Virus record (IMG/VR): IMGVR_UViG_3300023174_005338
Location: 124,001 to 188,000 of that record
DNA length: 64,000 nucleotides
Strand: one strand, 5' to 3'
Part shown: in pieces, positions 32,906-62,707 of the stretch
Layout of the letters: every line of letters starts with the position of its first letter
Numbering within the stretch: the stretch's first letter is position 1
The notes under the pieces: generated by a model
What the model saw: the letters and a program-made list of their open reading frames with translations, nothing else
Told to the model about the DNA's origin: nothing
Databases searched by the model: none
Program-made: the position numbers and the translations under genes

Positions 32906-32922
32906 TTACAATTTTCATCAAC

Positions 32923-34023: not shown

Positions 34024-34026
34024 ATC

Positions 34027-35535: not shown

Positions 35536-35538
35536 AAA

Positions 35539-36671: not shown

Positions 36672-36688
36672 AAAGGAAAAAACTCCAA

Positions 36689-37993: not shown

Positions 37994-40651
37994 TTGAGTT
38001 ACATTGACGCACTATTTGATCGTGAACACGATCGCATACATGTGGTTGAACGGCGTGATGGCAAACGATGCTATCAGGAATACGCACCCAACTACATATT
38101 CTACTATGATGATCCCCGTGGCAAGTTCACCAGTATCTATGGCACGCCGGTCAGCCGCTTCAGCACTAGAAACAACAAAGAGTTTCGCAAAGAAATCCGC
38201 ATACAGAGTGGCAAGCAACTGTATGAAAGTGATATCAATCCCATATTCCGTTGCCTGGAAGAAAACTACAAAGGACAAGATGCACCACGCCTGAACGTAG
38301 CGTTTTTCGACATTGAGGTAGACTTTGATCCCGAACGTGGCTTCTCGCCAACAACAGATCCATTCAATGCTATCACTGCTATCTCAGTTTATCTGCAATG
38401 GTTAGAGCAAATGGTCACCTTGGTTGTTCCTCCTCGGCACATGAGCCGTGCGACCGCGGATGAAATCGCCGGCGAGTTTGAAAACTGCATTGTGTTTGAT
38501 CGCGAAGAAGAAATGTTAAAAACGTTCTTGGATCTAATCGAAGACGCAGATGCACTTTCAGGTTGGAACAGTGAGGGTTATGATATACCCTACACGATAA
38601 ATCGTGTGACTCGGGTCCTAAGCAAAGACGACACACGTAGATTTTGTTTATGGAATCAATACCCCAAGAAGCGTATGTTTGAACGCTTTGGTGCCGAGAA
38701 CGAAACCTATGACTTGATTGGTCGTGTACACATGGACTATATGCAACTGTATCGCAAGTATACATATGAAGAACGTCACAGTTATAGCCTGGATGCCATT
38801 GCTGAATATGAACTGCAAGAAACCAAGACAGTATTTGAAGGCACACTAGATCAACTGTACAATCAAAACTTCAAAAAGTTCATTGAATACAACCGTCAAG
38901 ACACAATGATTCTAGGCAAGTTGGACAAGAAATTAAAGTTCTTGGATCTGGCCAATACCTTGGCACATGAAAATACTGTTTTGTTACAGACCACAATGGG
39001 TGCTGTGGCTGTGACAGAACAGGCCATTATCAATGAAGCACACGAGCGTGGCATGGTTGTTCCCAATCGCAAGGAACGCTACAGTGATGAAGACACACAG
39101 GCCGCTGGTGCCTATGTTGCATTTCCAAAAAAAGGCATACACGAATATGTAGGTAGCATAGACATCAACAGTTTGTATCCCAGTGCCATTCGTGCGCTTA
39201 ACATGGGCCCAGAAACCATCGTTGGGCAGTTGCGTCCTGTAATGACCGAACGATATATCAGCGAAAAGATGCGCAGTGGGTCCAGCTTTGCTGCGGCATG
39301 GGAAGGCCTGTTTGGTAGTTTGGAATACACGGCTGTGATGAATACCGAAGTCGGCACAGAAATTACCATTGATTGGAAAGATGGTGAAGCGTCAGTTCAC
39401 AGTGCCGCTGACGTATGGAAGATAATCTTTGATAGCAACCGCCCTTGGATGATCACGGCCAATGGCACTATCTTTACCTACGAGAAGGAAGCAGTCATTC
39501 CTGGCTTGTTAAAACGCTGGTATGCCGAACGCAAAGAAATGCAGGCCCGACTAAAGGAATGTAAAAATGCAGAAGATGAAGAATATTGGGACAAAAGACA
39601 ACTTGTTAAAAAGATTAACCTCAACAGTCTGTATGGTGCTATTCTTAATCCAGGTTGTAGATTCTTTGACAAGCGTATTGGCCAATCCACAACTCTTACT
39701 GGTCGTGCCATTGCCCGGCACATGGATGCTTATGTAAATGAATGTATCACTGGCGAATATGATCATGTGGGTGACGCAATCATCTATGGTGACACAGATT
39801 CATGTTATTTCTCAGCGTATCCAGTGTTACAAAAAGAAATAGAAGCCGGCAACATGACCTGGAACAGAGAAATCGCTGTTCAACTGTACAACAGCATTGC
39901 TGATCAAGTCAACGATAGCTTTCCTGGTTTTATGGAACAAGCATTCCATGTGCCGCGTGAGATGGGCGATGTGATCCGAGGTGGTCGCGAAATTGTTGCC
40001 AGCAAAGGTTTGTTTATTACCAAAAAGCGTTATGCTGTCATGTATTACGACAAAGAAAACAAGCGTGTGGACACACACGGTAGTCCTGGCCGAGTAAAAG
40101 CCATGGGTCTTGATCTCAAGCGCAGTGACACGCCCAAGGTCATCCAGGAGTTTTTAAGCGAAATTCTCGATGAGGTGCTGATTGGTACAAGTCGTGAGCA
40201 GATCATTGAAAAGATTCGCGAATTCAAATACAAGTTCAAAGAGCGTCCAGGTTGGGAGAAGGGCAGTCCCAAGCGTGTGAACAACTTGACCCGGTATGCC
40301 AAGGAAGAAGAACGCCTGGGCAAGGCCAACATGCCAGGTCATGTGCGTGCTGCTATCAATTGGAATAACTTACGTAGAATGAATTCGGACAAATACAGCA
40401 TGCAGATTGTTGATGGCATGAAGACCATTGTGTGCAAGTTGAAATCTAATCCCTTGGGCTGGACCAGCATAGGGTATCCCACAGACGAGATCCATTTGCC
40501 ATCTTGGTTTAAAGAACTACCCTTCGACGATGCAGAAATGGAAGCCACAGTAGTGGATCAAAAATTAGATAATCTGTTAGGTGTGTTAGACTGGGATTTG
40601 GCCAGTGCCACCAACACAGAAAACACTTTCCAAACTTTATTTGAGTGGTGA
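37994..40651 (+). CDS. Family B DNA polymerase with 3'-5' exonuclease
   Basis: FFDIEVD, GWNSEGYD, YNRQD, DINSLYPS, KKINLNSLYG, YGDTDS, KKRYA. Confidence 0.95.
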   Translation: MSYIDALFDREHDRIHVVERRDGKRCYQEYAPNYIFYYDDPRGKFTSIYGTPVSRFSTRNNKEFRKEIRIQSGKQLYESDINPIFRCLEENYKGQDAPRLNVAFFDIEVDFDPERGFSPTTDPFNAITAISVYLQWLEQMVTLVVPPRHMSRATADEIAGEFENCIVFDREEEMLKTFLDLIEDADALSGWNSEGYDIPYTINRVTRVLSKDDTRRFCLWNQYPKKRMFERFGAENETYDLIGRVHMDYMQLYRKYTYEERHSYSLDAIAEYELQETKTVFEGTLDQLYNQNFKKFIEYNRQDTMILGKLDKKLKFLDLANTLAHENTVLLQTTMGAVAVTEQAIINEAHERGMVVPNRKERYSDEDTQAAGAYVAFPKKGIHEYVGSIDINSLYPSAIRALNMGPETIVGQLRPVMTERYISEKMRSGSSFAAAWEGLFGSLEYTAVMNTEVGTEITIDWKDGEASVHSAADVWKIIFDSNRPWMITANGTIFTYEKEAVIPGLLKRWYAERKEMQARLKECKNAEDEEYWDKRQLVKKINLNSLYGAILNPGCRFFDKRIGQSTTLTGRAIARHMDAYVNECITGEYDHVGDAIIYGDTDSCYFSAYPVLQKEIEAGNMTWNREIAVQLYNSIADQVNDSFPGFMEQAFHVPREMGDVIRGGREIVASKGLFITKKRYAVMYYDKENKRVDTHGSPGRVKAMGLDLKRSDTPKVIQEFLSEILDEVLIGTSREQIIEKIREFKYKFKERPGWEKGSPKRVNNLTRYAKEEERLGKANMPGHVRAAINWNNLRRMNSDKYSMQIVDGMKTIVCKLKSNPLGWTSIGYPTDEIHLPSWFKELPFDDAEMEATVVDQKLDNLLGVLDWDLASATNTENTFQTLFEW

Positions 40652-41642: not shown

Positions 41643-42365
41643 ATGAGAGACCATTTATTAGACTTAGTAGAACACACACATGACCTGGGCGTTATCGACC
41701 TGGTCAAAATCACCGGTGATGACAAAAGCACCGTGATCAACGGCCTAGCAGAAGATCGCAGCGTGGTAGTGGAAGGCACATTTGCAGGTCCACATGCAGA
41801 TTTCATTGGCAACTTTGGCATGCCAAACTTGAGCAAGTTAAAGATTCTTTTGAACTTGCAAGAGTATCGAGAAAATGCTCAATTAAGTTTAACAAGGAAA
41901 GATACTGGCGCACCCGACGGCATCAACTTTGTGAATGCCACCGGAGACTTTAAAAACAACTACAGATTCATGGCCAGTGAAATTGTGAATGAAAAGCTAA
42001 AAACTGTCAAGTTCAAAGGAGTGAACTGGCACATTGAGTTTACTCCTACTGTGGCCAGCATCCAGCGACTAAAAATGCAGGCACAGGCCAATGCTGAAGA
42101 AGTCAACTTCCAGGCCAAGACTGAAAACGGCGATCTAAAGTTTTTCTTTGGTGATCATAGTACCCATGCAGGAAACTTTGTGTTTCATCCCGGTGTGACC
42201 GGCACACTCAAGCGTACCTGGTCCTGGCCAATCAAAACAGTGATTGGTATTCTTGATCTAACCGGTGACAAGACATTTAAGATCAGCGATGATGGTGCGG
42301 CCATGATCACTGTGGATTCGGGCTTGGCTGTTTACAACTACATTCTTCCAGCACAGAGCAAGTGA
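41643..42365 (+). CDS. Probable sliding clamp (gp45-like)
   Basis: 240 aa, alternating beta/alpha pattern, near polymerase; size and context only. Confidence 0.5.
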   Translation: MRDHLLDLVEHTHDLGVIDLVKITGDDKSTVINGLAEDRSVVVEGTFAGPHADFIGNFGMPNLSKLKILLNLQEYRENAQLSLTRKDTGAPDGINFVNATGDFKNNYRFMASEIVNEKLKTVKFKGVNWHIEFTPTVASIQRLKMQAQANAEEVNFQAKTENGDLKFFFGDHSTHAGNFVFHPGVTGTLKRTWSWPIKTVIGILDLTGDKTFKISDDGAAMITVDSGLAVYNYILPAQSK

Positions 42366-43936
42366 GCCAAGACAATCTAACTGCCAAGCAGAATGATTAT
42401 GCTGTGTTCTTGCCGGCCATCTCGGGTTTCTATGCCACATTTGTAGGCAAGCAACGTGATCCGGTCAACGGCCCCTATGTAGATCCTGCCCGTATGCCCG
42501 CAGGCATTCAAGACATGGAGATGATGAACTGGCTCAATGATCAGAAGGGGCTGTTTCCTTACAAGTGGTCCTTGTACTCGGGCGGTCATGCCAACTTGGA
42601 TCTCAACAAGCAAGACTGGTCAGAAGACATGGTTCGTAATCGTGACCCTAATACCTTGATGCTGGGCGATTCAGGTGGATTCCAGATTGCCAAAGGATTG
42701 TGGGAAGGTGACTGGAAGGCCAACTCAGGTTGCGCCAAGGCACAAAAGAAACGTGAGTCAGTGTTAAAGTGGCTGGACAGTATTGCTGACTATGGCATGA
42801 TCCTAGATATACCAACCTGGGTCATACATGACAAGAAAGCGTCAGCGGCCTGCCAGATTACCACCTTGGAAGAAGCAGTAGATGCCACCAAGTTCAACAA
42901 CGACTACTTCATGAAACACCGTCGAGGTGTCAAGAATGGCGGTGCCCGGTTCTTGAATGTGTTGCAGGGTGCCAATCATGCCGACGCAGATCGTTGGTAT
43001 GACATCATGAAGCACTATTGTGATCCCAAGGTATATCCCGACACTCACTTTGATGGTTGGAGTATGGGTGGGCAGAACATGTGTGATGTACATCTAGTGT
43101 TAAAGCGCCTGGTGGCCTTGCGTCATGACAATCTCCTACAAGAAGGCATACATGATTGGATGCACTTCTTGGGCACAAGTAAGCTAGAGTGGGCAGTGTT
43201 GTTGACTGATATCCAACGTGCTGTTCGCAAGTATGTGAATCCAAGTTTTACCATCAGTTTTGACTGTGCAAGTCCGTTCCTGGCCACAGCCAATGGACAA
43301 GTATATCATCACATTGATTTGCCACACAACGACAAGTGGTGCTATAGAATGAGCCCTATCGTGGATGACAAAAAGTATGCCACAGATACACGTCAGTTTG
43401 GTCCGGCTGTGATTGCTGACGGGTTGATCAATCACTTTGATGAAAGTCCTATCAGCCAACAGTTGCAAATGAAGGACATTTGTATCTACAAGCCCGGTGA
43501 TCTCAACAAGATTGGCAAGGAAGGCAAAACGTCTTGGGACAGTTTCAGCTATGCATTGTTGATGGGCCATAATGTGTGGATGCATATCGAAGCCGTGCAA
43601 CGTGCCAATCGCGAGTATGACGCAGGTTCATGGCCAGCCATGATGTGGAATCAAAATGGTGACCATGCCCGATTCAAAGACATTGTGGATGCCATATTTG
43701 CCACTCCAGATCGAGCCGAAGCTGAGTCCATAATCGAACACTATGACCGTTATTGGATGGACATCGTAGGCACACGTGGATTCAAAGGCAAAAAAGCCAA
43801 AAACGCACACAGTCAGTTCAATGCATTGTTCGAAACTGTTGACGAAGACGAATCAGATAGTGTACAATTAGAAGAAGAATTTAGCCCGGACCAACAGGCC
43901 CGATTAGATCAACTCGAACATGATCAAGCACAATGA
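42362..43936 (+). CDS. TGT-fold transglycosylase (DpdA-like 7-deazaguanine DNA insertase)
   Basis: GDSGGFQI, NVLQG, HFLG, SFDCASP, GHN; FolE/QueD/DpdL-like genes nearby. Confidence 0.7.
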   Translation: MSQDNLTAKQNDYAVFLPAISGFYATFVGKQRDPVNGPYVDPARMPAGIQDMEMMNWLNDQKGLFPYKWSLYSGGHANLDLNKQDWSEDMVRNRDPNTLMLGDSGGFQIAKGLWEGDWKANSGCAKAQKKRESVLKWLDSIADYGMILDIPTWVIHDKKASAACQITTLEEAVDATKFNNDYFMKHRRGVKNGGARFLNVLQGANHADADRWYDIMKHYCDPKVYPDTHFDGWSMGGQNMCDVHLVLKRLVALRHDNLLQEGIHDWMHFLGTSKLEWAVLLTDIQRAVRKYVNPSFTISFDCASPFLATANGQVYHHIDLPHNDKWCYRMSPIVDDKKYATDTRQFGPAVIADGLINHFDESPISQQLQMKDICIYKPGDLNKIGKEGKTSWDSFSYALLMGHNVWMHIEAVQRANREYDAGSWPAMMWNQNGDHARFKDIVDAIFATPDRAEAESIIEHYDRYWMDIVGTRGFKGKKAKNAHSQFNALFETVDEDESDSVQLEEEFSPDQQARLDQLEHDQAQ

Positions 43937-44451
43937 ACCGAGACGGACACGAAGCAGTTAGCTTCTTTGTAGGAACCGAAGTAGAGCACACTCCAGCATT
44001 TGGACAACGTACCTTGTTTGTAGTGGGCATACAAGATCCACAGATCGTTCTACAACAGTTCAACAACAATGATTGTGAACACATTTATTTTGGTGCCAAT
44101 CAAAGTTTTCCAGCGTTAGATAAAAACGATGCCGAGGGCTGGCGCGATTGGGAATGGATGATCCGTACTTGTCTGGAACAGATTCCCAACTACTGTACCT
44201 TGGACCTGGATGTGGCACAGGCCGAGGGCTTGCTGGAAAGCAGTCTGGTAGAATTTGATAATTTCGTTCCCATGATTTCGGTCAAACTACCTTACATACG
44301 TCAATTTGGCTACAATGCCACACTCAAACTGGATGATCGAGACTTTCGTGCTACCAACCCCGGAGTGTGGTGTCACAGCCTACATAGTTTACAAAAAAGA
44401 TCAGTGTTTACTGACTGGTCTAAATATACTCAAGATGAGGTGCTAAAATGA
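43933..44451 (+). CDS. Hypothetical protein coupled to DpdA-like gene
   Basis: ATGA overlap; HIYFGANQS, GVWCH. Confidence 0.7.
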   Translation: MNRDGHEAVSFFVGTEVEHTPAFGQRTLFVVGIQDPQIVLQQFNNNDCEHIYFGANQSFPALDKNDAEGWRDWEWMIRTCLEQIPNYCTLDLDVAQAEGLLESSLVEFDNFVPMISVKLPYIRQFGYNATLKLDDRDFRATNPGVWCHSLHSLQKRSVFTDWSKYTQDEVLK

Positions 44452-44675
44452 ATGATGTAAAACAACAAGCAGAAGAACTGATTTATCGCGCCATGAACTT
44501 GCAAGAGTTCACAGTGTTGCGTGATGAGAATGACATGATCCTGGATGGTGTCATACGCTATGATATCCGCCACCGACCCGGCACGCCATACCGTATCACT
44601 GTGCCGGCCATGAGCCAGAAGGAAGCAGAGACACGTGTAGACGAGTGGATTCGTGAAATGAGGAACGCAGGATGA
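44448..44675 (+). CDS. Hypothetical protein (75 aa)
   Basis: Coupled ORF. Confidence 0.6.
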   Translation: MNDVKQQAEELIYRAMNLQEFTVLRDENDMILDGVIRYDIRHRPGTPYRITVPAMSQKEAETRVDEWIREMRNAG

Positions 44676-45115
44676 TACAAAGCGAAAGAAAAACTATAGA
44701 ACGCATCAAGGAACATGCAGAACGCAAGATCTGGGTCACGTTCAGGCGCGAAGGCATACATCGCTACCCAGCTGCTGCCACAGATTCCAAACTATGTACT
44801 GCTGGTGAGTATGATGTCAGTTTCTTGGCCAATGCGCATAGACACATATTCTGGTTCAGAGTTTGGATAGATGTGTGGCATAACGATCGTGATATTGAGT
44901 TTATACAGATGAAACGCTGGTTAGAAAGTCTTTACAGCAAAGATGTATTGGAACTGGATTTCAAATCGTGCGAGATGATCGCAGACGACCTATATACACA
45001 GATAGCCGCACGTTATCCAGAACGTGCTGTATGGATTGAGGTAGCCGAGGATGGTGAGAACGGTTGCCTTATCAAGTATGAACTTTCTCGCCCTAACTTA
45101 TTAATCAAATATTAA
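44672..45115 (+). CDS. QueD-paralog T-fold protein (DpdL-like)
   Basis: LANAHRHIF = LxxxHRHxF; DIEFI, SCEMIA, EVAEDGENG. Confidence 0.65.
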   Translation: MIQSERKTIERIKEHAERKIWVTFRREGIHRYPAAATDSKLCTAGEYDVSFLANAHRHIFWFRVWIDVWHNDRDIEFIQMKRWLESLYSKDVLELDFKSCEMIADDLYTQIAARYPERAVWIEVAEDGENGCLIKYELSRPNLLIKY

Positions 45116-45126
45116 AAGGAAATACA

Positions 45127-45348
45127 ATGGGCAAGCGTGAATATCGTCCCAATCCACGTGCATTACAAACACTAGAAGAGTTGAGCAACTTCCTGGAGTT
45201 CTGTCGAGACTATGGCTACAGATTCCGCGAGGAGGATCTTTACAACTTTAAAGCCTATGCCTGGCAACAGTACAACAAGTTCAGCCAAGGCAAAAACGCC
45301 AAGAACATGTGGGTGGAAGATGCCCGCAGACTGGGACGCAACATATGA
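45127..45348 (+). CDS. Hypothetical protein (73 aa)
   Basis: SD AAGGA, coupled to next gene. Confidence 0.65.
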   Translation: MGKREYRPNPRALQTLEELSNFLEFCRDYGYRFREEDLYNFKAYAWQQYNKFSQGKNAKNMWVEDARRLGRNI

Positions 45349-46550
45349 GACGACTGTTCTACATGGGCCTAGAGAGCTATGAAGCTCGTTACACCCTACA
45401 ACTCACAGAATGGAATCGTCGTGTGTTCGACCGCCGTGGACTCGATGTTGTATATGTTCCTGGGTCGACCATTGACAACACACAGAGCATCAGCGTGGGT
45501 CAGGTTCTAGATGCACACGGCCGCAGTTATTTTTCAATGAGCCAGATGATGAATCTGGTTCAAATGATGCGCAATGGAGAAGTCACCAATGAAGATGTGG
45601 TCTACTTTGAAGACATGTTTCAGCCCGGTATCGAGAGCTTACCTTATATTCTCGATCAAGTGGATCCTAGCCAGCGTCCTCGTATTTTTGTTCGCTGTCT
45701 TGCTCAAGCCATTGATCCTGATGATTTCGTTCATGTGTGGGGCATGGCGGAGTGGATGTCAACGTATGAAAAAATGGTTAACCAATTCGTAACAGGTGTC
45801 CTGGCCACCAATGAAGAAATGGTTGCTCATATGCGTATCGCAGGATGGACTGCTCCTATCTACAATATTTCAGGATTGGCCTTTGGCAAACAGGAAGTTC
45901 TAGAGCGCATAGGCGGTGTACAGAATATAAAACCCTTTGACCAAAGAAAAATGCGTGTGGGCTTTGCTGCAAGATTTGATCAAGAGAAACAGCCAGACTT
46001 CTACATGGACTTGATTGAAATGTATCTAGCACAAGGACGTCACAAGGACATTGAGTTTGCCGTGTTTCAGGGTGGCCCACTGCGTAGCAACAATGCGAGA
46101 TATATTCTGCGAGCCAGAGAGTTGGAAAATCAAGGTCGACTCAAAATCTATGAAAACTTGAAGAAAAATGATTATTACGCTCTTGTCAACGATTCTCGTG
46201 TGTTGTTTAATTGTGCTTTGCAAGACTGGGTATCTAACACAGTATCAGAAGCCGATACTCTTGGTTGCAACGTGTTGTATCCTGCTTATCGCAGTTTCCC
46301 AGAAACCTTTGCTGACGATCCTAATCGCCTGTATGTGCCTTGGAGCATTGATGATGCCTTCCACAAGTTAGAAAACTTGTTGGATCAAGCACATCACAAC
46401 CAGGGCTTGATTTCAGATTGGACCGACGGCACTGTGGATCGTATCGTGGACATACTCGAAGGCACTGGTGAACAGTGGAACCGTGCAGGCAACCGTTATC
46501 GTGACCATGTCAGCCAAGCCAAATATCCGGTAAGGAAAATTGAAAAATGA
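45345..46550 (+). CDS. GT-B fold glycosyltransferase
   Basis: VGFAARFDQEKQ, EADTLGCNVL..AYRSFPE (group-1 ExxxxG pattern). Confidence 0.75.
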   Translation: MRRLFYMGLESYEARYTLQLTEWNRRVFDRRGLDVVYVPGSTIDNTQSISVGQVLDAHGRSYFSMSQMMNLVQMMRNGEVTNEDVVYFEDMFQPGIESLPYILDQVDPSQRPRIFVRCLAQAIDPDDFVHVWGMAEWMSTYEKMVNQFVTGVLATNEEMVAHMRIAGWTAPIYNISGLAFGKQEVLERIGGVQNIKPFDQRKMRVGFAARFDQEKQPDFYMDLIEMYLAQGRHKDIEFAVFQGGPLRSNNARYILRARELENQGRLKIYENLKKNDYYALVNDSRVLFNCALQDWVSNTVSEADTLGCNVLYPAYRSFPETFADDPNRLYVPWSIDDAFHKLENLLDQAHHNQGLISDWTDGTVDRIVDILEGTGEQWNRAGNRYRDHVSQAKYPVRKIEK

Positions 46551-47494
46551 GAGTAGTAGTCACCGGCGGAGCCGGATACATCGGTGGGCAAACCGTACTC
46601 AAACTGTTGGATGCTGGTCACAGTGTGTTTGCCATTGATCGTGTATGGGCTCCAGATCATCTTGAACATTCGGGTGCCAAGTGGTTGATTGGCGATTTTG
46701 CTGGCGAGGTGGCATTGCAAGCCATTGAAACCTTCCAACCCGATGCAATCATACACTGTGCTGGTACCAGCCTGGTAGGACCCAGCATGACCAATCCTGC
46801 GGAATACTATGACAACAACTTTGTTCGTACAAAAATTCTTTGCGATTGGTTGGTCCAAAAAAAAATAAAAACTAGACTGATCTTCTCCAGCAGTGCCGCA
46901 ACCTATGGCAATCCCATAATGACACCAGTGCAAGAAGTAGATCCCACCGAGCCTATCAGTCCATATGGTCAAAGCAAGCTCATGGTAGATTGGTTGTTGG
47001 CCAGCTACAAACATGCATACGACCTTGATTACGTGAGTTTTAGATATTTCAACGCCTGCGGCGCAGACAGTCAAGCTCGCCACGGACAAGCAGTTGGGGC
47101 CACTCATATCATTGCTCGTGTGCTAGAAGCGGTAAAAAACAAACAAGACTTTACCTTGTACGGCACTGACTATGCCACCGATGATGGCACATGTGTAAGA
47201 GATTACATCCACGTGGAGGATTTGGCCACTGCGCATGTCATGGCCATTGATCCTTCTATACCCAGCGACATTTATAATCTTGGAACCAACCGGGGCACAA
47301 GCAATCTTGAAGTAATTCAGGCCGCGGCAAAAATCACCCAACAAGATGTGGGCGTGTTGCACGGTCCCAAGCGTGCAGGCGATCCTGCTGTATTGACCGC
47401 AGACTGCGGCAAATTCATTGCAGTCAGTGCCTGGCAACCAAAATTTGATCTCAACGACATGATAGCTCATGCCTGGGCCTGGTACACCAGATGA
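46547..47494 (+). CDS. galE: UDP-glucose 4-epimerase
   Basis: GGAGYIG, FSSSAATYG, YGQSK, RYFNACG, DGTCVRDYIHV. Confidence 0.9.
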   Translation: MRVVVTGGAGYIGGQTVLKLLDAGHSVFAIDRVWAPDHLEHSGAKWLIGDFAGEVALQAIETFQPDAIIHCAGTSLVGPSMTNPAEYYDNNFVRTKILCDWLVQKKIKTRLIFSSSAATYGNPIMTPVQEVDPTEPISPYGQSKLMVDWLLASYKHAYDLDYVSFRYFNACGADSQARHGQAVGATHIIARVLEAVKNKQDFTLYGTDYATDDGTCVRDYIHVEDLATAHVMAIDPSIPSDIYNLGTNRGTSNLEVIQAAAKITQQDVGVLHGPKRAGDPAVLTADCGKFIAVSAWQPKFDLNDMIAHAWAWYTR

Positions 47495-48126
47495 AAACCC
47501 TTAATGACTATACTGATGCATTTTTAGCAATCAAAGATTTTGAATCTGCGTTGGCTGATTTTACTGGAGCTCCATTTGCCATCACCACTGATTGTTGCAC
47601 GCATGCCATTGAAATTGCTTTTAGATTAGCACATGATAGTTCTGCAGTATCCTTTCCTGCCCGAACCTATCTCAGTGTGCCCATGACCATGCATAAACTA
47701 GGTATTAATTATGTTTTTGAAGATATCAAATGGAGAGAATGTTATCAATTCAAAGGATCACAAATATGGGATTGTGCAAGACTGTTCAAAGAAAACATGT
47801 ATCAAGCCGGAACCATACAGTGTTTGAGTTTTGGAAGAACCAAACCGTTACAAATTAGTCGTGGAGGTTGCATATTGACCAATGATCCAGAACTTTATCA
47901 ACGAGCAAGCCGTATGCGTTATGATGGGCGTGATATTTTTCAATTCAGCCTCGGAACCGAGCATAGTTGGGACGTGCAAAAAGATTTTGAAGTCGGATAT
48001 CATTATTATTTGAGGCCCGAAGATTGTGTAACAGGGTTAAATCTTTTAGAACAAAGAAATTTTGTTGAACAGGTTGAAAAACACTACAACTATCCAGATT
48101 GTAGAACTATAAACATTCGAAATTAA
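47491..48126 (+). CDS. Short DegT/DnrJ-family PLP aminotransferase
   Basis: DCCTHAI, WDCA, LSFGRTKPL...RGGCIL; lacks usual C-terminal domain. Confidence 0.65.
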   Translation: MKTLNDYTDAFLAIKDFESALADFTGAPFAITTDCCTHAIEIAFRLAHDSSAVSFPARTYLSVPMTMHKLGINYVFEDIKWRECYQFKGSQIWDCARLFKENMYQAGTIQCLSFGRTKPLQISRGGCILTNDPELYQRASRMRYDGRDIFQFSLGTEHSWDVQKDFEVGYHYYLRPEDCVTGLNLLEQRNFVEQVEKHYNYPDCRTINIRN

Positions 48127-48138
48127 ATCCATTTGATC

Positions 48139-48166
48139 TTGCAAAAATCTAAATATCGTGTATAAT
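48139..48166 (+). promoter_or_regulatory. Dual promoter (sigma70-like with TAAATA in spacer)
   Basis: TTGCAA-16 nt-TATAAT; TAAATA 48150-48155. Confidence 0.6.
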
Positions 48167-48177
48167 AAAAGGAAACC

Positions 48178-49017
48178 ATGACAACATTTACCAGTGAAGA
48201 CAGAGAGAACGCAGTGAAAAATAATGCCAGCCAAAAAACATTTGATGCCTTGCAACAAAGCCGTATTGTTGCCGAAGCACCATATCATCCAGGCTATGAA
48301 GATGCTGTAGTAGATCCCGACGAAGGCCGCCCACTGAGCGTGGTTATACGTGACAGCATGCGAGCTTCAGGTAAAAGATTCTGGGCTGGCGACAACATTA
48401 GTGAGTTTATCGAATCAGAGCGAGAACGCGAACAGCTGATTGACGAAGCCACACAAGCATTTGAAACTGTCTTGGACACCTTGTTGATTGATCGTGCGAC
48501 AGATCCCAACAGCCAAGGCACAGCAAGACGCTTGGCAAAAATGTATTTCAATGAAATCATGGCCGGCCGGTATGAACCCAGACCCGATGCCACAGCATTT
48601 CCCAACGATAGCGAGGACAGATATGAAGGAATGTTGGTTGTTAGAAGTGAATTGCGTAGTATGTGTAGTCATCACCATCAGCCTGTATCTGGGGTGGCTT
48701 ACATTGGTATCATTGCTGCCAACAAACTTATTGGCCTTAGCAAGTATACTCGTATTGCTCAGTGGTGCGCTAGGCGTGGTACTCTCCAGGAAGAGCTAGC
48801 CAACGACATTGCCAGAGAGATTGCCCGAGCCACTGACAGCGAAAACATTGGCGTTTATATCCAAGCCACACACGGTTGCTGTGAAAATCGTGGCATCATG
48901 GCACACAGTTCGTTGACTCAGACCACGGTGCTCAAAGGTGCGTTCAAAACTGATCCTGGCACCAAGAAAGAGTTCATGGATAATATCAAACTGCAACAAG
49001 AGTTTGCACCAAGATGA
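48178..49017 (+). CDS. folE: GTP cyclohydrolase I (N-terminally extended)
   Basis: SMCSHHHQP, GLSKYTRI, RRGTLQE, HGCCENRG. Confidence 0.92.
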   Translation: MTTFTSEDRENAVKNNASQKTFDALQQSRIVAEAPYHPGYEDAVVDPDEGRPLSVVIRDSMRASGKRFWAGDNISEFIESEREREQLIDEATQAFETVLDTLLIDRATDPNSQGTARRLAKMYFNEIMAGRYEPRPDATAFPNDSEDRYEGMLVVRSELRSMCSHHHQPVSGVAYIGIIAANKLIGLSKYTRIAQWCARRGTLQEELANDIAREIARATDSENIGVYIQATHGCCENRGIMAHSSLTQTTVLKGAFKTDPGTKKEFMDNIKLQQEFAPR

Positions 49018-49442
49018 TCCAGCCCTTGAGAGATGATCTCATGGTGCAACAACAGTTGCCCAACGGTTTAGAAGGTCGGGTGGCCGCTTGGCAACACATG
49101 GTGGCTGTAATCATGTTGAACCAGACTGGTCGTAAGCCTGTAAAAACTGTATTTCCCATCTTCATGCATTATTGGCCTAGTCCCAGCAAGTTTGTACGAG
49201 CAACAGAACAACAAGTTCGAGATGTGATATGGAGTCTAGGCATGGTCAATGTGCGGTATAAAAGATTGGTTGAAATGACCTACGACTTCATGCGCTGGGA
49301 TCTAGGTGATGCCACCAAGTTATATGGTATTGGCAAATACGGTTCGGACAGTTACGAAATGTTTTTCAAGAACAATTACCGAGTAGAACCCACAGACAAA
49401 GAGCTGATTCGCTATTTAGAACAAGAAGTTAGTGTATACTAA
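49014..49442 (+). CDS. MBD4-like HhH DNA glycosylase
   Basis: IMLNQT, LGMVNVR, LYGIGKYGSDSY (HhH plus catalytic Asp). Confidence 0.8.
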   Translation: MIQPLRDDLMVQQQLPNGLEGRVAAWQHMVAVIMLNQTGRKPVKTVFPIFMHYWPSPSKFVRATEQQVRDVIWSLGMVNVRYKRLVEMTYDFMRWDLGDATKLYGIGKYGSDSYEMFFKNNYRVEPTDKELIRYLEQEVSVY

Positions 49443-51950: not shown

Positions 51951-52319
51951 ATGACACTTGTAGAAGCTCAACAAGCTGGAATAGCACCATGGGACAATGA
52001 AATAGACAACCGTAATCGAGTGGTTGTTTACCTAGACCGGTATCCCTGCACGCCCGGACATAGATTGTATGTGCCCAAAGACAATGACAATCCCAACTGG
52101 GTAGTAAGAGCCTTTGAGGAGGCCCTGGCCGATGGTACCCACATGGTAGCATCTGGTGAGTGCGATGGGTTTAACATTGGTTACAACAGCGGCGAGGCAG
52201 CCGGACAAACTGTCATGTATCCACACATACATCTTATTCCACGTCGAGTCGGAGATGTAGCAGATCCAGTGGGCGGTGTGCGTAACACCATACCCGGCAA
52301 AGGAAATTATCGCAAATGA
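51951..52319 (+). CDS. HIT-family nucleotide hydrolase
   Basis: YPCTPGHRLYVP, NSGEAAGQTVMYPHIHLIPR. Confidence 0.85.
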   Translation: MTLVEAQQAGIAPWDNEIDNRNRVVVYLDRYPCTPGHRLYVPKDNDNPNWVVRAFEEALADGTHMVASGECDGFNIGYNSGEAAGQTVMYPHIHLIPRRVGDVADPVGGVRNTIPGKGNYRK

Positions 52320-52332
52320 AAGAAAACAGTCA

Positions 52333-54167: not shown

Positions 54168-54617
54168 ATGGCAAAGTATCTTTCAACCAAGCACTACGGA
54201 CACAACATTGGGTTGAGTGCTGTATTCCGTCAACCCAATGCTGACCACAGTCACTGTCACTTGCTACATGGTTACAGCCTGGCATTCACATTCACTTTTG
54301 GTTGCGATCAGTTAGATGATAAAAACTGGGCAGTGGACTTTGGTGGACTCAAAGAACTAAAAGCCTGGCTAGAAGATCATTTTGATCACAAGCTGGCCCT
54401 GGATCGTGCAGATCCGCACTTGGACAAGTTTCAAGAACTAGAAACATTGGGTTTAGCTGAGATCAGAATGTTTGATGGGGTAGGCGCTGAAAAGTTTGCC
54501 GAACATGCATTCAATTTTGCAGATCTCTTAATCCGCGAAAAGACCAATGGTCGTTGCTTTTGCGTCAGGGTAGAATGTGCTGAACACGGTGCCAACAGTG
54601 CCATCTACGAAGGATAA
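54168..54617 (+). CDS. queD: 6-carboxy-5,6,7,8-tetrahydropterin synthase
   Basis: HCHLLHGY (CxxxHG), VDFGGLK, FDHKL, EKFA, VECAE. Confidence 0.85.
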   Translation: MAKYLSTKHYGHNIGLSAVFRQPNADHSHCHLLHGYSLAFTFTFGCDQLDDKNWAVDFGGLKELKAWLEDHFDHKLALDRADPHLDKFQELETLGLAEIRMFDGVGAEKFAEHAFNFADLLIREKTNGRCFCVRVECAEHGANSAIYEG

Positions 54618-54659: not shown

Positions 54660-55481
54660 ATGGCAAACGACTATAAAATAGCAATATTACTTCCCACACG
54701 AGGCCGCACCGACGCCTTGACACGCAGTCTAATTGGCCTGTTAGAAAAAGCCACAGATCTAGATTCCATACAAGTGTTGTTGGGCTTGGACACAGATGAC
54801 ACTGTAGGCATCCAGCACTTCCAAGAAGAACTACAACCTAAATTAGACGACATGGGTGTGGATTATACTGCCATGTCTTTTGAGCCCATAGGCTACAGCC
54901 AATTGCATGATTATGTAAACACCCTGGCGCGAGCCAGTTCGGCAGATTGGATGTTTTTCTGGAACGACGATGCTGTCATGGACAGTGAAGCCTGGGATAC
55001 GGAAATTTGCAAGTACACTGGTGAATTTAAATTACTAGCAGTTCATACTCACAATGACCATCCCTACAGTATATTTCCCATAGTGCCCAGAGCCTGGCTG
55101 GATGTGATTGGACATCTCAGTTTGCACAGCATGAACGATGCCTGGCTGAGTCAAAATGCTTACTGTGTGGACATATTTGAGCGAATCAATGTGCATGTCA
55201 CGCATGATCGAGCTGACCTTACTGGCAATAATTTAGATGCCACTTACAAACAACGCGAACTCTTGGAAGGTAATCCCAGCAACCCCAAAGACTTTCATCA
55301 TCCAGAACAGACCTCAAAACGCATGCGTGAGTGTGACAAATTGAATGATTATTTGAAAACCATAGGGCAGAATCCTACCTGGTGGGATGCCGTCAAAACT
55401 CAACAGCAAGATCCCTGGCAACGGCTGAGAGAAAACGACGTCAATAATCAAATGCGTCAATTCCAAATAAAAATGAAATGA
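54660..55481 (+). CDS. GT2-like glycosyltransferase
   Basis: ILLPTRGR, LDTDD, FFWNDD; TATAAATA 54644-54651. Confidence 0.75.
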   Translation: MANDYKIAILLPTRGRTDALTRSLIGLLEKATDLDSIQVLLGLDTDDTVGIQHFQEELQPKLDDMGVDYTAMSFEPIGYSQLHDYVNTLARASSADWMFFWNDDAVMDSEAWDTEICKYTGEFKLLAVHTHNDHPYSIFPIVPRAWLDVIGHLSLHSMNDAWLSQNAYCVDIFERINVHVTHDRADLTGNNLDATYKQRELLEGNPSNPKDFHHPEQTSKRMRECDKLNDYLKTIGQNPTWWDAVKTQQQDPWQRLRENDVNNQMRQFQIKMK

Positions 55482-56428
55482 AAAAAATTGTATATGTCAC
55501 AGGTTGTTTGGGATTCATAGGAGTACACGTCACACGACAATGTCTGGCACGTGGATGGCATGTGATTGGTGTGGACAAAGGTACCTATGCCAGCAATTTT
55601 GATTTCTTAGATGAATTTCAAAAATACGATACATTTAAATTCATACACCGAGATATCAATGACCTTGACCGGTTGTATGATTGCGATTATATCATAAACA
55701 CGGCTGCTGAAACTCATGTAGACAACTCAATCATGAGTTCCGAGATATTCCTGCACAGCAACATCAACGGTGTACACCGTCTGTTAGAACTGATCCGCCA
55801 ACAACCTGTTCAAAAGCAACCAATATTGTTGCATTTTTCAACCGACGAGGTCTATGGAGATATTGATTCGGGCGCACATACCGAAACCGATCTGTTAAAA
55901 CCCAGCAATCCTTATTCAGCATCAAAGGCAGCTGCCGACATGTTGATCCTGGCCTGGGCAAGAACATATGGCATCCGATATGTGATCGTGCGTCCTACCA
56001 ACAATTATGGCATTGGTCAATATGTTGAAAAATTAATTCCCAAGTCGATCAAATATCTCAAAATAGGCAGGAAAATTGACCTGCATGATCGTGGTGAGCC
56101 GCGGAGGACTTGGTTGCATGTCGAAGACACTGCTCGTGCGGCCATGACCGTGATTGATCACGGCAAAGTCAACGAAATCTACAACATTTCAGGCAATGCG
56201 GAAATGCCCAACAAGGAAGTTATCAAGAAGATTTTGCAACACTATCCCGGCAGCGGTGCTGAAGATCGTTGGGAAGATTATATAATTGGCAGTCATCGAC
56301 AAGGCCAAGATGTGCGTTATGCAATCGATGACTCCAAACTCAAAGCCCTGGGATGGCGACCCGTGGCCAACTTTGATCAAGAATTACAAAGAGTTATAGA
56401 GTACTATATGTTAAATTTTATTTGGTGA
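55478..56428 (+). CDS. rmlB: NDP-glucose 4,6-dehydratase (RmlB/RfbB-like)
   Basis: AAETHVDNSI, STDEVYG, NPYSASKA, NNYG, LIPK, RxGQDVRYAID. Confidence 0.85.
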   Translation: MKKIVYVTGCLGFIGVHVTRQCLARGWHVIGVDKGTYASNFDFLDEFQKYDTFKFIHRDINDLDRLYDCDYIINTAAETHVDNSIMSSEIFLHSNINGVHRLLELIRQQPVQKQPILLHFSTDEVYGDIDSGAHTETDLLKPSNPYSASKAAADMLILAWARTYGIRYVIVRPTNNYGIGQYVEKLIPKSIKYLKIGRKIDLHDRGEPRRTWLHVEDTARAAMTVIDHGKVNEIYNISGNAEMPNKEVIKKILQHYPGSGAEDRWEDYIIGSHRQGQDVRYAIDDSKLKALGWRPVANFDQELQRVIEYYMLNFIW

Positions 56429-56431
56429 TCC

Positions 56432-57130
56432 ATGGGAACATATTATAAAGCAGTAGCACAATTTATGGATGCAGTTGATCCCTCTGGTGCCTGGGTTGAG
56501 ATCGGAGTTGACCGTGGCGAAGGCAGCACCAAATTCTTTGCTGACATAGCAAAAACAAAAGGCATTAAGTTTTATGGTGTTGATGCCGATGAAAATCAAA
56601 TTGCTCGAGCTAGAACAGTGTTATCAGCACAAGGACAAGCAATATTAGGAGCCGACGGTCAATTTCGATTGGCCGAAGGACCTTTGCCGGATCACATAGA
56701 ATTAGTGCATGCCTTTGGTGAAAATTTTCTAGAGCAATTCACACGCGACAATCCAGGAAAGAAATTTTCGTTGGTGTACCTTGACAACTTTGACTGGGAC
56801 TACTGGGTTGGCGGTCAAGAAGAATCTTTTGTCCCAGCACAAAAGCAACACTATAGAGATTACATGGGCACCGAAATGACCAACATCAACAGCCAAAAAA
56901 CTCATCTGTTGCAGGCCATGCGACTAATGCCATTGATGACTGAAAACAGTATCATAGTATGTGATGACACCTGGTATCATCCCAACGAAGGAGTGTTCAT
57001 TGGCAAGTGTTCCGCAGTAATTCCTTACTTGTTGTTACAAGGATATGAAGTATTAAACAGCCAAGGCTACAGACAAAACAGTGGTGCTATTTTGGGCAGA
57101 TTTACTAAACGCACAGATTCAGAGAGTTGA
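56432..57130 (+). CDS. SAM-dependent methyltransferase (paralog 1)
   Basis: VEIGVDRGEGS, YLDNFDWD, CDDTW. Confidence 0.7.
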   Translation: MGTYYKAVAQFMDAVDPSGAWVEIGVDRGEGSTKFFADIAKTKGIKFYGVDADENQIARARTVLSAQGQAILGADGQFRLAEGPLPDHIELVHAFGENFLEQFTRDNPGKKFSLVYLDNFDWDYWVGGQEESFVPAQKQHYRDYMGTEMTNINSQKTHLLQAMRLMPLMTENSIIVCDDTWYHPNEGVFIGKCSAVIPYLLLQGYEVLNSQGYRQNSGAILGRFTKRTDSES

Positions 57131-57133
57131 TCA

Positions 57134-62701: not shown

Positions 62702-62707
62702 AACACC

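What the first reader, a model, noticed from the sequence alone, without database searches (positions are those of the whole stretch)
42362..49442. 7-deazaguanine insertion genes coupled to a glycosyltransferase, epimerase and aminotransferase
One tightly coupled run: clamp-like, TGT/DpdA-like, unknown, unknown, LxxxHRHxF T-fold protein, unknown, GT-B, GalE, DegT-like, FolE, glycosylase; QueD lies 5 kb on. FolE-QueD-QueE make CDG. As I recall, DpdL-type QueD paralogs are linked to unsubstituted 7-deazaguanine in phage DNA. Sugar genes inside the same operon raise the possibility of a glycosylated or amino-sugar deazapurine, or a second hypermodified base, which I do not know to be described in DNA. 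QueE and canonical QueC are not in this window.
Basis: partly seen in the sequence, partly recalled or inferred. Interest (0 to 1): 0.75.

Follow-up and report, generated by a model that had tools for sequence, protein, structure and literature searches.

The report
Deazaguanine DNA module with dedicated glycosyltransferase
A freshwater jumbo phage carries the known genes for putting 7-deazaguanine into its DNA, plus a glycosyltransferase family found almost only beside those genes, so the phage may sugar-coat a guanine substitute in DNA, which has not been described.

Summary
The gene run is real. Eleven co-directional genes lie at 41643-49442, and 8 of the 10 junctions are 4-bp overlaps.

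**Gene identities**
- The 524-aa protein has a TGT fold and both catalytic aspartates. It is a distant DpdA branch shared with Pseudomonas phage PA5oct.
- The 147-aa protein is a clear DpdL (LxxxHRHxF motif, 53% identical to ACP17 DpdL).
- FolE, QueD and GalE are solid.
- The "DegT" is a 211-aa miniature, and the glycosylase call is weak.
- QueE and a purine phosphoribosyltransferase lie 1 kb beyond the window. No QueC exists in the genome.

**Main new result**
- The GT-B enzyme belongs to a distinct, phage-only GT4-like family of 797 representatives that is tied to DpdL.
- It sits next to DpdL in six unrelated cultured phage groups, in 70 of 70 relatives of this phage, and in 5 of 6 distant metagenomic members.
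- It is absent genome-wide from five DpdL phages, including phiST, whose DNA carries plain 7-deazaguanine.
- The cassette behind the GT varies: GalE plus mini-DegT, an RfbH/ThDP deoxysugar set, or nothing.

**Reading**
- The best reading is that 7-deazaguanine is inserted by DpdA and then glycosylated.
- The chemistry is unproven.
- I found no paper describing a glycosylated deazaguanine in DNA.

The parts
37994..40651 (+). Family B DNA polymerase; the upstream boundary of the replication and modification block
   Evidence: PF00136 and PF03104. The same PolB-clamp-DpdA order is seen in PA5oct and Phosso.
41643..42365 (+). Sliding-clamp-like protein
   Evidence: phrog_12062. It is 36% identical to PA5oct EST35_0314 and 30% identical to the Phosso gene annotated as sliding clamp beta.
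42362..43936 (+). DpdA-like DNA guanine transglycosylase (TGT fold), PA5oct-type branch
   Evidence: AF2 pLDDT 85. The top 50 Foldseek PDB matches are all TGT, with E about 4e-8. D103 (GDSGGFQ) and D301 (SFDCAS) are invariant in 28 homologs. hhalign against DpdA3 gives probability 88.8% and E 2.5e-6. It is 36% identical to PA5oct EST35_0316.
43933..44451 (+). Unknown 172-aa protein that travels with DpdA
   Evidence: Conserved in nearly all lineage loci. A homolog lies directly upstream of DpdA3 in ACP17 (E 2.7e-22), and there is a 47% identical homolog in PA5oct. No family or Atlas lead was found.
44448..44675 (+). Unknown 75-aa protein
   Evidence: Present in only some relatives; no family hit.
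44672..45115 (+). DpdL, a QueD paralog and predicted 7-carboxy-7-deazaguanine decarboxylase
   Evidence: Motif LANAHRHIF. It is 53% identical to ACP17 DpdL with E 4e-45, 38% to BUCT-ZZ01 and 34% to phiST CGPG_00067. phrog_17812. The family definition is in PMC10516641.
45127..45348 (+). Unknown 73-aa protein between DpdL and the GT
   Evidence: Conserved with both GT types in the lineage. Not found outside the lineage.
45345..46550 (+). DpdL-linked GT-B glycosyltransferase (GT4-like); likely start at ATG 45345
   Evidence: AF2 pLDDT 93.8. The best PDB matches are BshA, MshA and glycogen synthase. In BFVD the best two matches, one of them the ACP17 GT, have TM 0.73-0.86, followed by a gap to generic GTs. 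73 of 111 family members hit PF00534. R210, K215 and D294...E302 are conserved. The family has 797 representatives.
46547..47494 (+). UDP-glucose 4-epimerase GalE
   Evidence: TIGR01179 at 308.7 bits against a cut-off of 262.3. It follows the type I GT in 31 of 35 non-redundant relatives.
47491..48126 (+). Miniature DegT-family PLP protein (211 aa)
   Evidence: PF01041 at 59.7 bits in two stretches. SFGRTK retains the lysine position, read directly. Homologs of 33-38% identity lie in phage glycan islands.
48178..49017 (+). GTP cyclohydrolase I (FolE) with an N-terminal extension of about 90 aa
   Evidence: PF01227 at 134 bits, matching residues 93-270.
49014..49442 (+). Small HhH-GPD-like protein; a variable accessory gene
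   Evidence: PF00730 at 25.7 bits against a cut-off of 26.2. Present in only a few relatives. Not homologous to the Phosso 'glycosylase'.
54168..54617 (+). QueD (CPH4 synthase)
   Evidence: PF01242 at 52 bits. It is the only PTPS hit in the genome.
54660..55481 (+). GT-A (GT2-like) glycosyltransferase adjacent to QueD
   Evidence: Atlas feature score 0.99, with 232 of 256 features shared with a viral GT2 cluster. Conserved next to QueD in relatives with either GT type.
55478..64000 (+). Deoxysugar cassette: 4,6-dehydratase-like SDR, two methyltransferases, an unknown protein, RfbH-like 3-dehydrase, aminotransferase, split ThDP enzyme, FkbM methyltransferase and an SDR that runs off the window
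   Evidence: RfbH equivalog at 436 bits against a cut-off of 423. In relatives L068 and L094 this cassette lies directly behind the DpdL-linked GT.

Best explanation
This is the DNA-modification block of a 337-kb freshwater jumbo phage, embedded among its replication genes.

**Proposed pathway**
1. FolE, QueD and QueE (QueE lies just outside the window) convert GTP to 7-carboxy-7-deazaguanine.
2. DpdL removes the carboxyl group to give 7-deazaguanine.
3. The divergent DpdA-like transglycosylase swaps this base for guanine in phage DNA.
4. A glycosyltransferase family dedicated to this system then attaches a sugar to the deazaguanine. This most likely happens on DNA after insertion, but possibly on the free base before insertion.
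5. Phage-made nucleotide sugars serve as donors. GalE suggests UDP-galactose here. The mini-DegT protein, the QueD-linked GT-A and the RfbH/ThDP deoxysugar cassette suggest further or alternative sugars.
6. The XGPRT-like enzyme next to QueE probably recycles the displaced guanine back into GTP.
7. The outcome would be DNA resistant to host nucleases, with a sugar that differs between related phages.

**Shown here**
- The fold and family of each enzyme.
- The absence of QueC.
- The GT-DpdL linkage.
- The variability of the sugar cassette.

**Inferred**
- The DpdL chemistry, which is a literature prediction.
- Every step involving the sugar acceptor, the site of attachment and the timing.
For: **The pathway enzymes are present**
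- There is no QueC.
- There is no ThyA-type hydroxymethylase. Only ThyX is present, so the usual hydroxymethyl-pyrimidine acceptor for DNA sugars is missing.

**The GT looks like a working enzyme**
- Its fold is GT4-like.
- The diphosphate-binding R210 and K215 and a DX7E motif are conserved.
- Five of the eight invariant residues lie in the N-terminal, acceptor-side half. This fits one common acceptor across the family.

**The GT family is specific to DpdL systems**
- It lies beside or within about 3 kb of DpdL in BUCT-ZZ01, ACP17, Xanthomonas X1, BCSR5, PA5oct and Phosso. Each of the five genomes searched whole (ACP17, PA5oct, X1, Phosso, BCSR5) has one copy.
- It is present in 70 of 70 lineage loci that have enough flanking sequence.
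- 5 of 6 distant representatives (28-34% identity by tblastn) on short metagenomic contigs have DpdL within 1.7 kb.
- 7 of the 8 hits among 185,579 species genomes have DpdL directly upstream, and all eight are MAG contigs; the longer ones carry the phage module.
- It is absent from the whole genomes of phiST, RHph_I1_18, Bakedbeans, D479 and Ahp1. phiST DNA is plain dDG (PMC10516641).

**The sugar genes track the GT**
- GalE follows the type I GT in 31 of 35 loci and the type II GT in 0 of 8.
- In L068 and L094 the RfbH cassette takes GalE's place directly behind the GT.

**Literature context**
- dpdL plus dpdA from ACP17 gave no dDG in E. coli, and the authors suggested that other enzymes may be required.
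- PA5oct DNA resists restriction enzymes whose sites contain G, and it is attacked by nucleases that sense hypermodified DNA. The modification itself is unidentified (PMC12191111).
Against: - There are no chemical data for any GT-bearing phage.
- 7-deazaguanine has no hydroxyl group. A GT4-type enzyme would need an unusual acceptor atom (C7 or C8, N2 or O6), or an unrecognised enzyme would have to create a handle first.
- The co-variation between GT type and GalE rests on only 1-2 switches on the DpdA tree, so the Fisher p of 3e-6 overstates the independence of the data.
- Mini-DegT homologs, and sugar islands generally, occur in phages whose DNA carries no sugar. One example is immuto_2-6A, whose DNA carries fdPreQ1.
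- The genome has other GTs that could use these sugars.
- The complex prediction for GT with DpdL gave no answer.
- DpdL's decarboxylase activity has never been demonstrated.
Confidence: 0.55

Rival explanations
1. The DNA ends up with plain 7-deazaguanine, as in phiST. The GT, GalE, mini-DegT and the deoxysugar cassette instead glycosylate a non-DNA target, such as a virion protein, a host envelope glycan, or a replication or modification protein.
For: - Sugar islands containing the same mini-DegT exist in phages whose DNA shows no sugar.
- The genome carries at least three further GTs.
- dDG offers no ordinary hydroxyl acceptor.
Against: - This does not explain why the GT family is found essentially only next to DpdL, across unrelated phages and on short contigs.
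- It does not explain why the GT sits among early replication genes rather than structural genes.
- It does not explain why the family is absent from phages known or expected to stop at dDG.
Confidence: 0.2
2. The modification is made before replication, at the nucleotide level. The XGPRT-like enzyme phosphoribosylates the deazapurine base, the nucleotide enters the dNTP pool and the polymerase incorporates it. The GT and the TGT-like protein then act on precursors or serve other roles.
For: - The phosphoribosyltransferase-QueE adjacency is conserved in this lineage, in BUCT-ZZ01 and in PA5oct.
- Complete replacement of G occurs in DpdA3 phages.
- Deazapurine nucleoside antibiotic pathways use a phosphoribosyltransferase; this is from my own knowledge and was not checked here.
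Against: - The TGT-like protein keeps both catalytic aspartates and is conserved alongside the module.
- The published view is that all deazaguanine DNA modifications are made after replication by DpdA.
- Guanine salvage explains the phosphoribosyltransferase equally well.
Confidence: 0.12
3. The GT makes a soluble deazapurine glycoside by joining the base directly to a sugar. This would be a metabolite or an inhibitor of host enzymes rather than a component of DNA.
For: - The tightest linkage is GT to DpdL, the enzyme that makes the base, rather than GT to DpdA. In Phosso, DpdA is 170 kb away.
Against: - Every GT-bearing phage examined also encodes a DpdA or DpdA3.
- PA5oct virion DNA is itself modified at G.
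Confidence: 0.06
4. The TGT-like enzyme acts on tRNA, giving a queuosine-type modification of host or phage tRNAs, and not on DNA.
For: The fold matches are to tRNA-guanine transglycosylases.
Against: - There is no hit to the TGT Pfam model, whereas the control genomes all hit it.
- The nearest profile relatives are phage DpdA3.
- The gene lies between the polymerase clamp and DpdL.
- Its PA5oct ortholog sits in a phage whose DNA is G-modified.
Confidence: 0.03

Closest known systems
DpdL/DpdA3 7-deazaguanine (dDG) system of Cellulophaga phage phiST (Cui et al., NAR 2023, PMC10516641)
   Same: - It has FolE, QueD, QueE, DpdL with the LxxxHRHxF motif, and a divergent TGT-like transglycosylase.
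- It has no QueC.
- The genes are clustered.
   Different: - phiST has no member of the GT family anywhere in its genome, and its DNA is plain dDG.
- Here the transglycosylase is a longer (524 aa), very distant branch: hhalign E 2.5e-6 against DpdA3, and 36% identity to PA5oct.
- Here a GT-B, a GT-A, a phosphoribosyltransferase and nucleotide-sugar genes are added.
Deazaguanine clusters of Acidovorax phage ACP17, Pseudomonas phage PA5oct, Xanthomonas phage X1, Burkholderia phage BCSR5, Sinorhizobium phage Phosso and Synechococcus phage BUCT-ZZ01
   Same: - They share the DpdA - GT - DpdL core.
- PA5oct also shares the PolB-clamp-DpdA order, the DpdA branch and the phosphoribosyltransferase-QueE pair.
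   Different: - Their GT is annotated as hypothetical and has not been discussed in the papers I could read.
- None of them has GalE, mini-DegT or the deoxysugar cassette next to the GT within the stretches examined.
- The DNA modification of PA5oct is unidentified, and I found no DNA analysis for the others in the papers I could search.
Glycosylated hydroxymethyl- and hydroxy-pyrimidines of T-even phages, RB69/DLP3 and TET-linked phage glycosyltransferases
   Same: - A phage glycosyltransferase decorates a non-canonical base.
- The sugar varies between related phages.
- Phage-encoded nucleotide-sugar enzymes sit alongside (PMC13326640).
   Different: - Those sugars go onto a hydroxyl on a pyrimidine made by a ThyA homolog or by TET. 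This genome has no ThyA homolog.
- The GT here is not close to T4-type DNA glucosyltransferases. A cyanophage 'DNA alpha-GT' appears only at rank 42 with TM 0.5.
Mannosyl- and galactosyl-queuosine in animal tRNA (recalled from memory, not checked here)
   Same: A 7-deazaguanine derivative in a nucleic acid is glycosylated. As I recall, one of the enzymes is a GT4-family protein.
   Different: - The acceptor there is a hydroxyl on the cyclopentenediol side chain of queuosine in RNA.
- Here there is no QueC, QueF or side-chain pathway, and the nucleic acid would be DNA.

Membership tests
DpdA / TGT superfamily | TGT-type (beta/alpha)8 barrel fold | tested here: met
   AF2 model with pLDDT 85. 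The top 50 Foldseek PDB matches are all tRNA-guanine transglycosylase, with probability 1.00, E 4e-8 to 6e-7 and target TM about 0.55.
DpdA / TGT superfamily | Two catalytic aspartates (the DSGG motif and the nucleophile Asp in an xFDC/YDS motif) | tested here: met
   D103 in GDSGGFQ and D301 in SFDCAS are invariant in 28 homologs. hhalign aligns both with the DpdA3 motifs.
DpdA / TGT superfamily | Match to the curated TGT sequence model (PF01702) | tested here: not met
   There is no Pfam or NCBIfam hit, and no PF01702 hit anywhere in the genome although 14 of 14 control genomes hit it. The published DpdA3 was likewise found only by HHpred.
DpdA / TGT superfamily | Membership of a named subfamily (DpdA1-4, bDpdA) | tested here: inconclusive
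   Closest to DpdA3, but only at hhalign probability 88.8% and E 2.5e-6 over 193 columns. BLASTP against ACP17 DpdA3 gives E 1e-4 and 20% identity. It forms its own branch with PA5oct and Phosso. The paper's supplementary lists are not held.
DpdA / TGT superfamily | Exchange of guanine for a 7-deazaguanine in DNA | not testable with these tools
   This needs an enzyme assay or DNA mass spectrometry.
DpdL (QueD paralog) | Signature LxxxHRHxF replacing the QueD motif CxxxHGH | tested here: met
   LANAHRHIF is read. The definition is in PMC10516641. The alignment of 11 DpdL sequences is.
DpdL (QueD paralog) | Sequence homology to the published DpdL proteins (phiST CGPG_00067 and ACP17) | tested here: met
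   53% identity and E 4e-45 to ACP17; 34% to phiST.
DpdL (QueD paralog) | Genomic context: FolE, QueD, QueE and DpdA are present and QueC is absent | tested here: met
DpdL (QueD paralog) | CDG decarboxylase activity | not testable with these tools
   This activity is also undemonstrated in the literature.
GT-B glycosyltransferase, GT4-like (Glycos_transf_1) | Two-Rossmann-domain GT-B fold | tested here: met
   AF2 pLDDT 93.8 and pTM 0.91. Foldseek matches are BshA, MshA, PimA, glycogen synthase and SenB, with E 1e-12 to 1e-9.
GT-B glycosyltransferase, GT4-like (Glycos_transf_1) | Curated PF00534 match | tested here: inconclusive
   The window protein scores 24.6-24.7 bits against a cut-off of 26.4. 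73 of 111 family members match PF00534 at E <= 0.01, with a best E of 2e-10.
GT-B glycosyltransferase, GT4-like (Glycos_transf_1) | Donor-binding residues (R/K pair and an EX7E-type motif) | tested here: met
   R210 and K215 are invariant, and D294 and E302 are conserved in 90% or more of members, in 111 sequences. The motif reads DX7E rather than EX7E. Assigning roles to these residues is inference.
T4-type DNA glucosyltransferases (alpha-GT / beta-GT) | Close structural or sequence similarity to known DNA glucosyltransferases | tested here: not met
   None appears among the top 50 PDB matches. Only a cyanophage 'DNA alpha-GT' appears, at rank 42 with TM 0.5.
GalE (UDP-glucose 4-epimerase) | Score above the TIGR01179 equivalog cut-off | tested here: met
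   308.7 bits against a cut-off of 262.3.
DegT/DnrJ/EryC1 sugar aminotransferases | Full-length fold of about 360-400 aa with the PLP lysine | tested here: not met
   PF01041 is hit at 59.7 bits, but the protein is 211 aa and covers only about profile positions 26-95 and 170-262. The lysine position is kept (SFGRTK). It is a miniature relative, not a standard member.
QueE (CDG synthase), outside the window | Homology to QueE | tested here: inconclusive
   30% identity and E 1e-30 to the annotated PA5oct QueE. The only NCBIfam hits are five QueE models, all below their cut-offs.

The most novel reading that the evidence does not exclude
A phage-only GT4-like family of 797 representatives at 50% identity is a dedicated 7-deazaguanine glycosyltransferase. 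Phages carrying it, including this abundant freshwater jumbo lineage and the cultured phages PA5oct, ACP17, X1, BCSR5, Phosso and BUCT-ZZ01, would contain a sugar-bearing deazapurine in their DNA. This would be the first glycosylated purine-type base in DNA. The sugar would differ between relatives, from a hexose to a branched 3,6-dideoxy sugar.
Probability: 0.45. Interest if true: 0.9.

Novelty: new variant of a known kind. Interest (0 to 1): 0.78.

Why it matters
- All DNA sugar decorations described in the papers I could search sit on pyrimidines. The eight known DNA deazaguanines carry only small groups. A glycosylated deazaguanine would add a new class of DNA base.
- It would offer an explanation for two open observations. 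Reconstituting ACP17 dpdL plus dpdA failed to give dDG, and the G modification that makes PA5oct DNA restriction-resistant remains unidentified.
- PA5oct-like phages include therapy candidates, so their DNA chemistry affects sequencing, engineering and sensitivity to host defences.
- The claim is directly testable, because six cultured phage groups carry the same DpdA-GT-DpdL core.
- The lineage is very abundant in lakes: thousands of near-identical GT sequences were found and 362 related loci in IMG/VR.

Tried and rejected
- Megablast of the region against cultured phages found nothing.
- Sequence searches of the PDB with the single GT, the single DpdA-like protein and the DpdA profile found nothing useful.
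- The 172-aa proteins of similar size near DpdL in PA5oct and BUCT-ZZ01 are not homologs of the window's 172-aa protein. The true PA5oct homolog lies 26 kb away.
- The Atlas gave no lead for the 172-aa protein.
- The 'QueC' hit just outside the window is NadE.
- The radical SAM gene at 31921-32823 is not QueE.
- The window's HhH-GPD protein is unrelated to Phosso's 'glycosylase'.
- A viral-contig scan with a distant GT member found nothing.
- The full GT alignment was too diverse for the genome scan, so a narrower alignment was used.
- The complex prediction for GT with DpdL returned 'no answer' and is not used as evidence.
- RNA-library contigs from lakes hold only fragments 85-95% similar, from relatives. 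They do not show transcription of this phage.
- The supplements of the NAR 2023 paper and the 2024 MMBR review are not held.
- I considered the usual hydroxymethyl-pyrimidine route to DNA glycosylation and rejected it, because there is no ThyA homolog.

Full report
**Setting**

The window is bases 124001-188000 of a 337,119-bp viral record with direct terminal repeats, judged complete. Near-identical sequence is held by freshwater and lake-water metagenomes. Relatives are very common. More than 8,000 candidate proteins matched the GT, and the best 120 are 86-94% identical. The DpdL protein found 362 related loci in IMG/VR.

**The observation**

The ORF list shows eleven co-directional genes between 41643 and 49442. 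Eight of the ten junctions are 4-bp start/stop overlaps. The run follows a family B DNA polymerase at 37994-40651 and a 334-aa unknown protein.

**Identity of each gene**

- The 240-aa protein is 36% identical to the PA5oct protein that lies next to PolB. It is 30% identical to the Phosso gene annotated as sliding clamp beta.
- The 524-aa protein hits no Pfam, NCBIfam or PHROG family. PF01702 finds nothing in the genome.
  - An AlphaFold2 model built on 28 homologs (pLDDT 85) matches only tRNA-guanine transglycosylases among its top 50 PDB hits (E about 4e-8).
  - D103 in GDSGGFQ and D301 in SFDCAS are invariant.
  - A profile-profile comparison with five DpdA3 proteins aligns the catalytic core at probability 88.8% and E 2.5e-6.
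  - Its closest cultured relatives are in PA5oct-like Pseudomonas jumbo phages (36%), Phosso (30%) and a Vibrio phage.
  - I call it a DpdA-like transglycosylase of a distinct branch.
- The 147-aa protein carries LANAHRHIF. It is 53% identical to the ACP17 protein and 34% to phiST CGPG_00067. Cui et al. named these proteins DpdL (PMC10516641).
- GalE exceeds the equivalog cut-off.
- FolE and QueD are ordinary, although FolE has a 90-aa N-terminal extension.
- The DegT-like protein is only 211 aa. It covers two pieces of the family profile and keeps the PLP-lysine position.
- The HhH-GPD call is just under threshold, and the gene is present in only a few relatives.

**Beyond the window**

An XGPRT-like phosphoribosyltransferase and a QueE lie at genome 188353-189946. 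The QueE is 30% identical to PA5oct QueE with E 1e-30, and its only NCBIfam hits are QueE models. The sole PF06508 hit is NadE, so the genome has no QueC. That matches the published gene set for DpdL phages.

**The glycosyltransferase**

- A model built on 111 diverse homologs is confident (pLDDT 93.8).
- It is a GT-B fold closest to the retaining GT4 enzymes BshA, MshA, PimA, glycogen synthase and SenB.
- 73 of 111 family members hit PF00534.
- R210 and K215 are invariant, and a DX7E motif is conserved.
- Five of the eight invariant residues are in the N-terminal, acceptor-side half.
- An exhaustive search found 797 representatives at 50% clustering, 209 of them at E <= 1e-30.
- Among predicted viral structures, the two best matches have TM 0.73-0.86. 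One is the ACP17 protein, and the other is an unnamed 370-aa viral protein. Generic GTs follow only after a clear gap.

**The GT family is tied to DpdL**

In cultured phages, a family member lies beside or within about 3 kb of DpdL in six groups:

| Phage | Gene order |
|---|---|
| ACP17 | FolE, 172-aa homolog, DpdA3, GT, DpdL, QueE |
| BUCT-ZZ01 | DpdA3, DpdL, GT |
| Xanthomonas X1 | GT, DpdA3, DpdL, QueE |
| BCSR5 | GT, DpdA3 |
| PA5oct | clamp, an 86-aa ORF, DpdA, GT, DpdL |
| Phosso | clamp, glycosylase, DpdL, GT, a 122-aa ORF, FolE |

- Whole-genome searches find exactly one copy in each of five of these phages.
- Whole-genome searches find none in phiST, RHph_I1_18, Bakedbeans, D479 and Ahp1, which have DpdL but no GT.
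- I sampled six distant representatives (28-34% identity by tblastn). Five lie on contigs of 2.5-10.7 kb with a DpdL within 1.7 kb on the same strand. The sixth contig has almost no flank.
- A scan of 185,579 species genomes found only eight hits, all on MAG contigs; the longer ones carry the phage module. Seven have DpdL directly upstream.
- In 70 of 70 lineage loci with at least 1.2 kb downstream of DpdL, a family member follows within 0.5-3.1 kb.

This is not chance adjacency within one operon.

**The sugar genes**

- The lineage has two GT types. Type I is 66-95% identical to the window protein. Type II is divergent and about 360 aa, like those of PA5oct and ACP17.
- Among non-redundant loci with at least 5 kb of flank, GalE follows the type I GT in 31 of 35 and mini-DegT in 29 of 35.
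- With type II the counts are 0 of 8 and 1 of 8 (Fisher p 3e-6).
- On a DpdA tree, type II forms one nested clade plus one long-branch outlier. The pattern therefore reflects only one or two switches and should not be over-read.
- The GT-GalE pair does persist in much more distant relatives, with DpdA at 38-45% identity.
- The space between the GT and FolE is a variable cassette.
- In L068 and L094, GalE and mini-DegT are replaced directly behind the GT by homologs of the window's cluster at 55478-63382: a 4,6-dehydratase-like SDR, an unknown 244-aa protein, an RfbH-like dehydrase (87% identical), a split ThDP enzyme and an FkbM methyltransferase.
- A further protein next to QueD (54660-55481) is a GT-A by Atlas features (0.99). 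It is conserved with both GT types.
- So the core is DpdA, the 172-aa protein, DpdL, GT-B, FolE, QueD, GT-A, the phosphoribosyltransferase and QueE. The nucleotide-sugar genes are a changeable accessory.
- The genome has ThyX but no ThyA homolog. The known route to DNA sugars through hydroxylated pyrimidines is therefore not available.

**Mechanism proposed**

1. GTP is converted to CDG by FolE, QueD and QueE.
2. DpdL gives 7-deazaguanine. This step is a literature prediction.
3. The DpdA-like enzyme exchanges that base for guanine in DNA.
4. The DpdL-linked GT adds a sugar from a phage-tuned donor.
5. The phosphoribosyltransferase may salvage the released guanine. This is inference from the conserved phosphoribosyltransferase-QueE pairing in three phage groups.

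Whether the sugar is added to DNA or to the free base cannot be told from sequence. Neither can the atom that carries it. The lack of a hydroxyl on 7-deazaguanine is the main chemical objection.

**Fit with the literature**

- Cui et al. could not obtain dDG in E. coli from ACP17 or phiST dpdL plus dpdA, and suggested that further enzymes may be needed. Their text never mentions a glycosyltransferase or a sugar.
[quoted passage not shown] It is targeted by nucleases that sense hypermodified DNA, but the base was not identified (PMC12191111).
- Full-text searches found no report of a glycosylated deazaguanine in DNA.
- Known DNA glycosylation concerns 5hmC, 5hmU and 5-hydroxycytosine.

**Cautions**

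- Phage sugar islands need not serve DNA. The mini-DegT has homologs inside glycan islands of immuto_2-6A and S-SCSM2R, and immuto DNA carries fdPreQ1 only.
- This genome has other GTs.
- The complex prediction gave no answer, and the RNA data are uninformative.

**Verdict**

The product remains a prediction. I rate it a new variant of a known kind of system, of high interest because it can be tested at once in cultured phages.

Noticed in passing
window 55478-64000 (continues to genome 188317): This is a deoxysugar cassette. It holds an RfbH-equivalog 3-dehydrase (436 bits against a cut-off of 423), a dTDP-glucose-4,6-dehydratase-like SDR, two Methyltransf_24 proteins, a class I/II aminotransferase, an acetolactate-synthase-like ThDP enzyme split into two genes, an FkbM methyltransferase and a further SDR. 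The content suggests a methylated or branched 3,6-dideoxy sugar.
   Followed up: partly
window 54660-55481: This unannotated protein next to QueD looks like a GT-A (GT2-like) glycosyltransferase by Atlas features (0.99). It has a paralog at genome 7767-8483.
   Followed up: partly
L011:353-1946 (genome 188353-189946): An XGPRT-like phosphoribosyltransferase lies directly upstream of QueE. The same pairing is seen in BUCT-ZZ01 and PA5oct. It could recycle the guanine released by transglycosylation, or it could phosphoribosylate the deazapurine.
   Followed up: partly
whole genome G000: There are thirteen radical SAM matches in one phage genome, most of them outside the window. The one at window 31921-32823 is not QueE.
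   Followed up: partly
window 32000-36700: This stretch has low GC (39-41% against about 47%). It contains a hexapeptide-repeat transferase on the + strand, and a nitronate-monooxygenase-like protein and a truncated AMP-binding enzyme on the minus strand. It may be an acquired island.
   Followed up: no
window 49508-51949: An 813-aa FG-GAP repeat protein interrupts the modification block. It has a weak, sub-threshold match to a TcdB middle/N-terminal region. It is present in only some relatives.
   Followed up: no
window 52276-53259 and 53138-54076: Two ORFs overlap by 122 bp. One is an unknown 327-aa protein that sits beside GalE in relatives L023 and L071. The other is a 312-aa PP-loop (asparagine-synthase-like) protein upstream of QueD. 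The overlap may mean a wrong start or a frameshift. The PP-loop enzyme could act on the CDG carboxylate.
   Followed up: no
L101:9212-10363 (Vibrio phage Bakedbeans gp176): DpdL forms the C-terminal part of a 383-aa protein, so it is fused to an unknown N-terminal domain.
   Followed up: no
L013:6010-7353 (Synechococcus phage BUCT-ZZ01): A 447-aa protein just upstream of DpdA3 gives a weak hit to the GT family profile (E 1e-5). It may be a second, divergent GT in that cluster.
   Followed up: no
L011:2180-4224 and 9282-10403: The phage encodes NAD synthase (NadE), a UDP-glucose/GDP-mannose dehydrogenase and a Gram-negative porin. The porin points to a Gram-negative host.
   Followed up: no
L017:8831-12652 (phiST record NC_020842): A 3.8-kb stretch right after the phiST DpdA3 gene carries no annotated feature in that record.
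   Followed up: no
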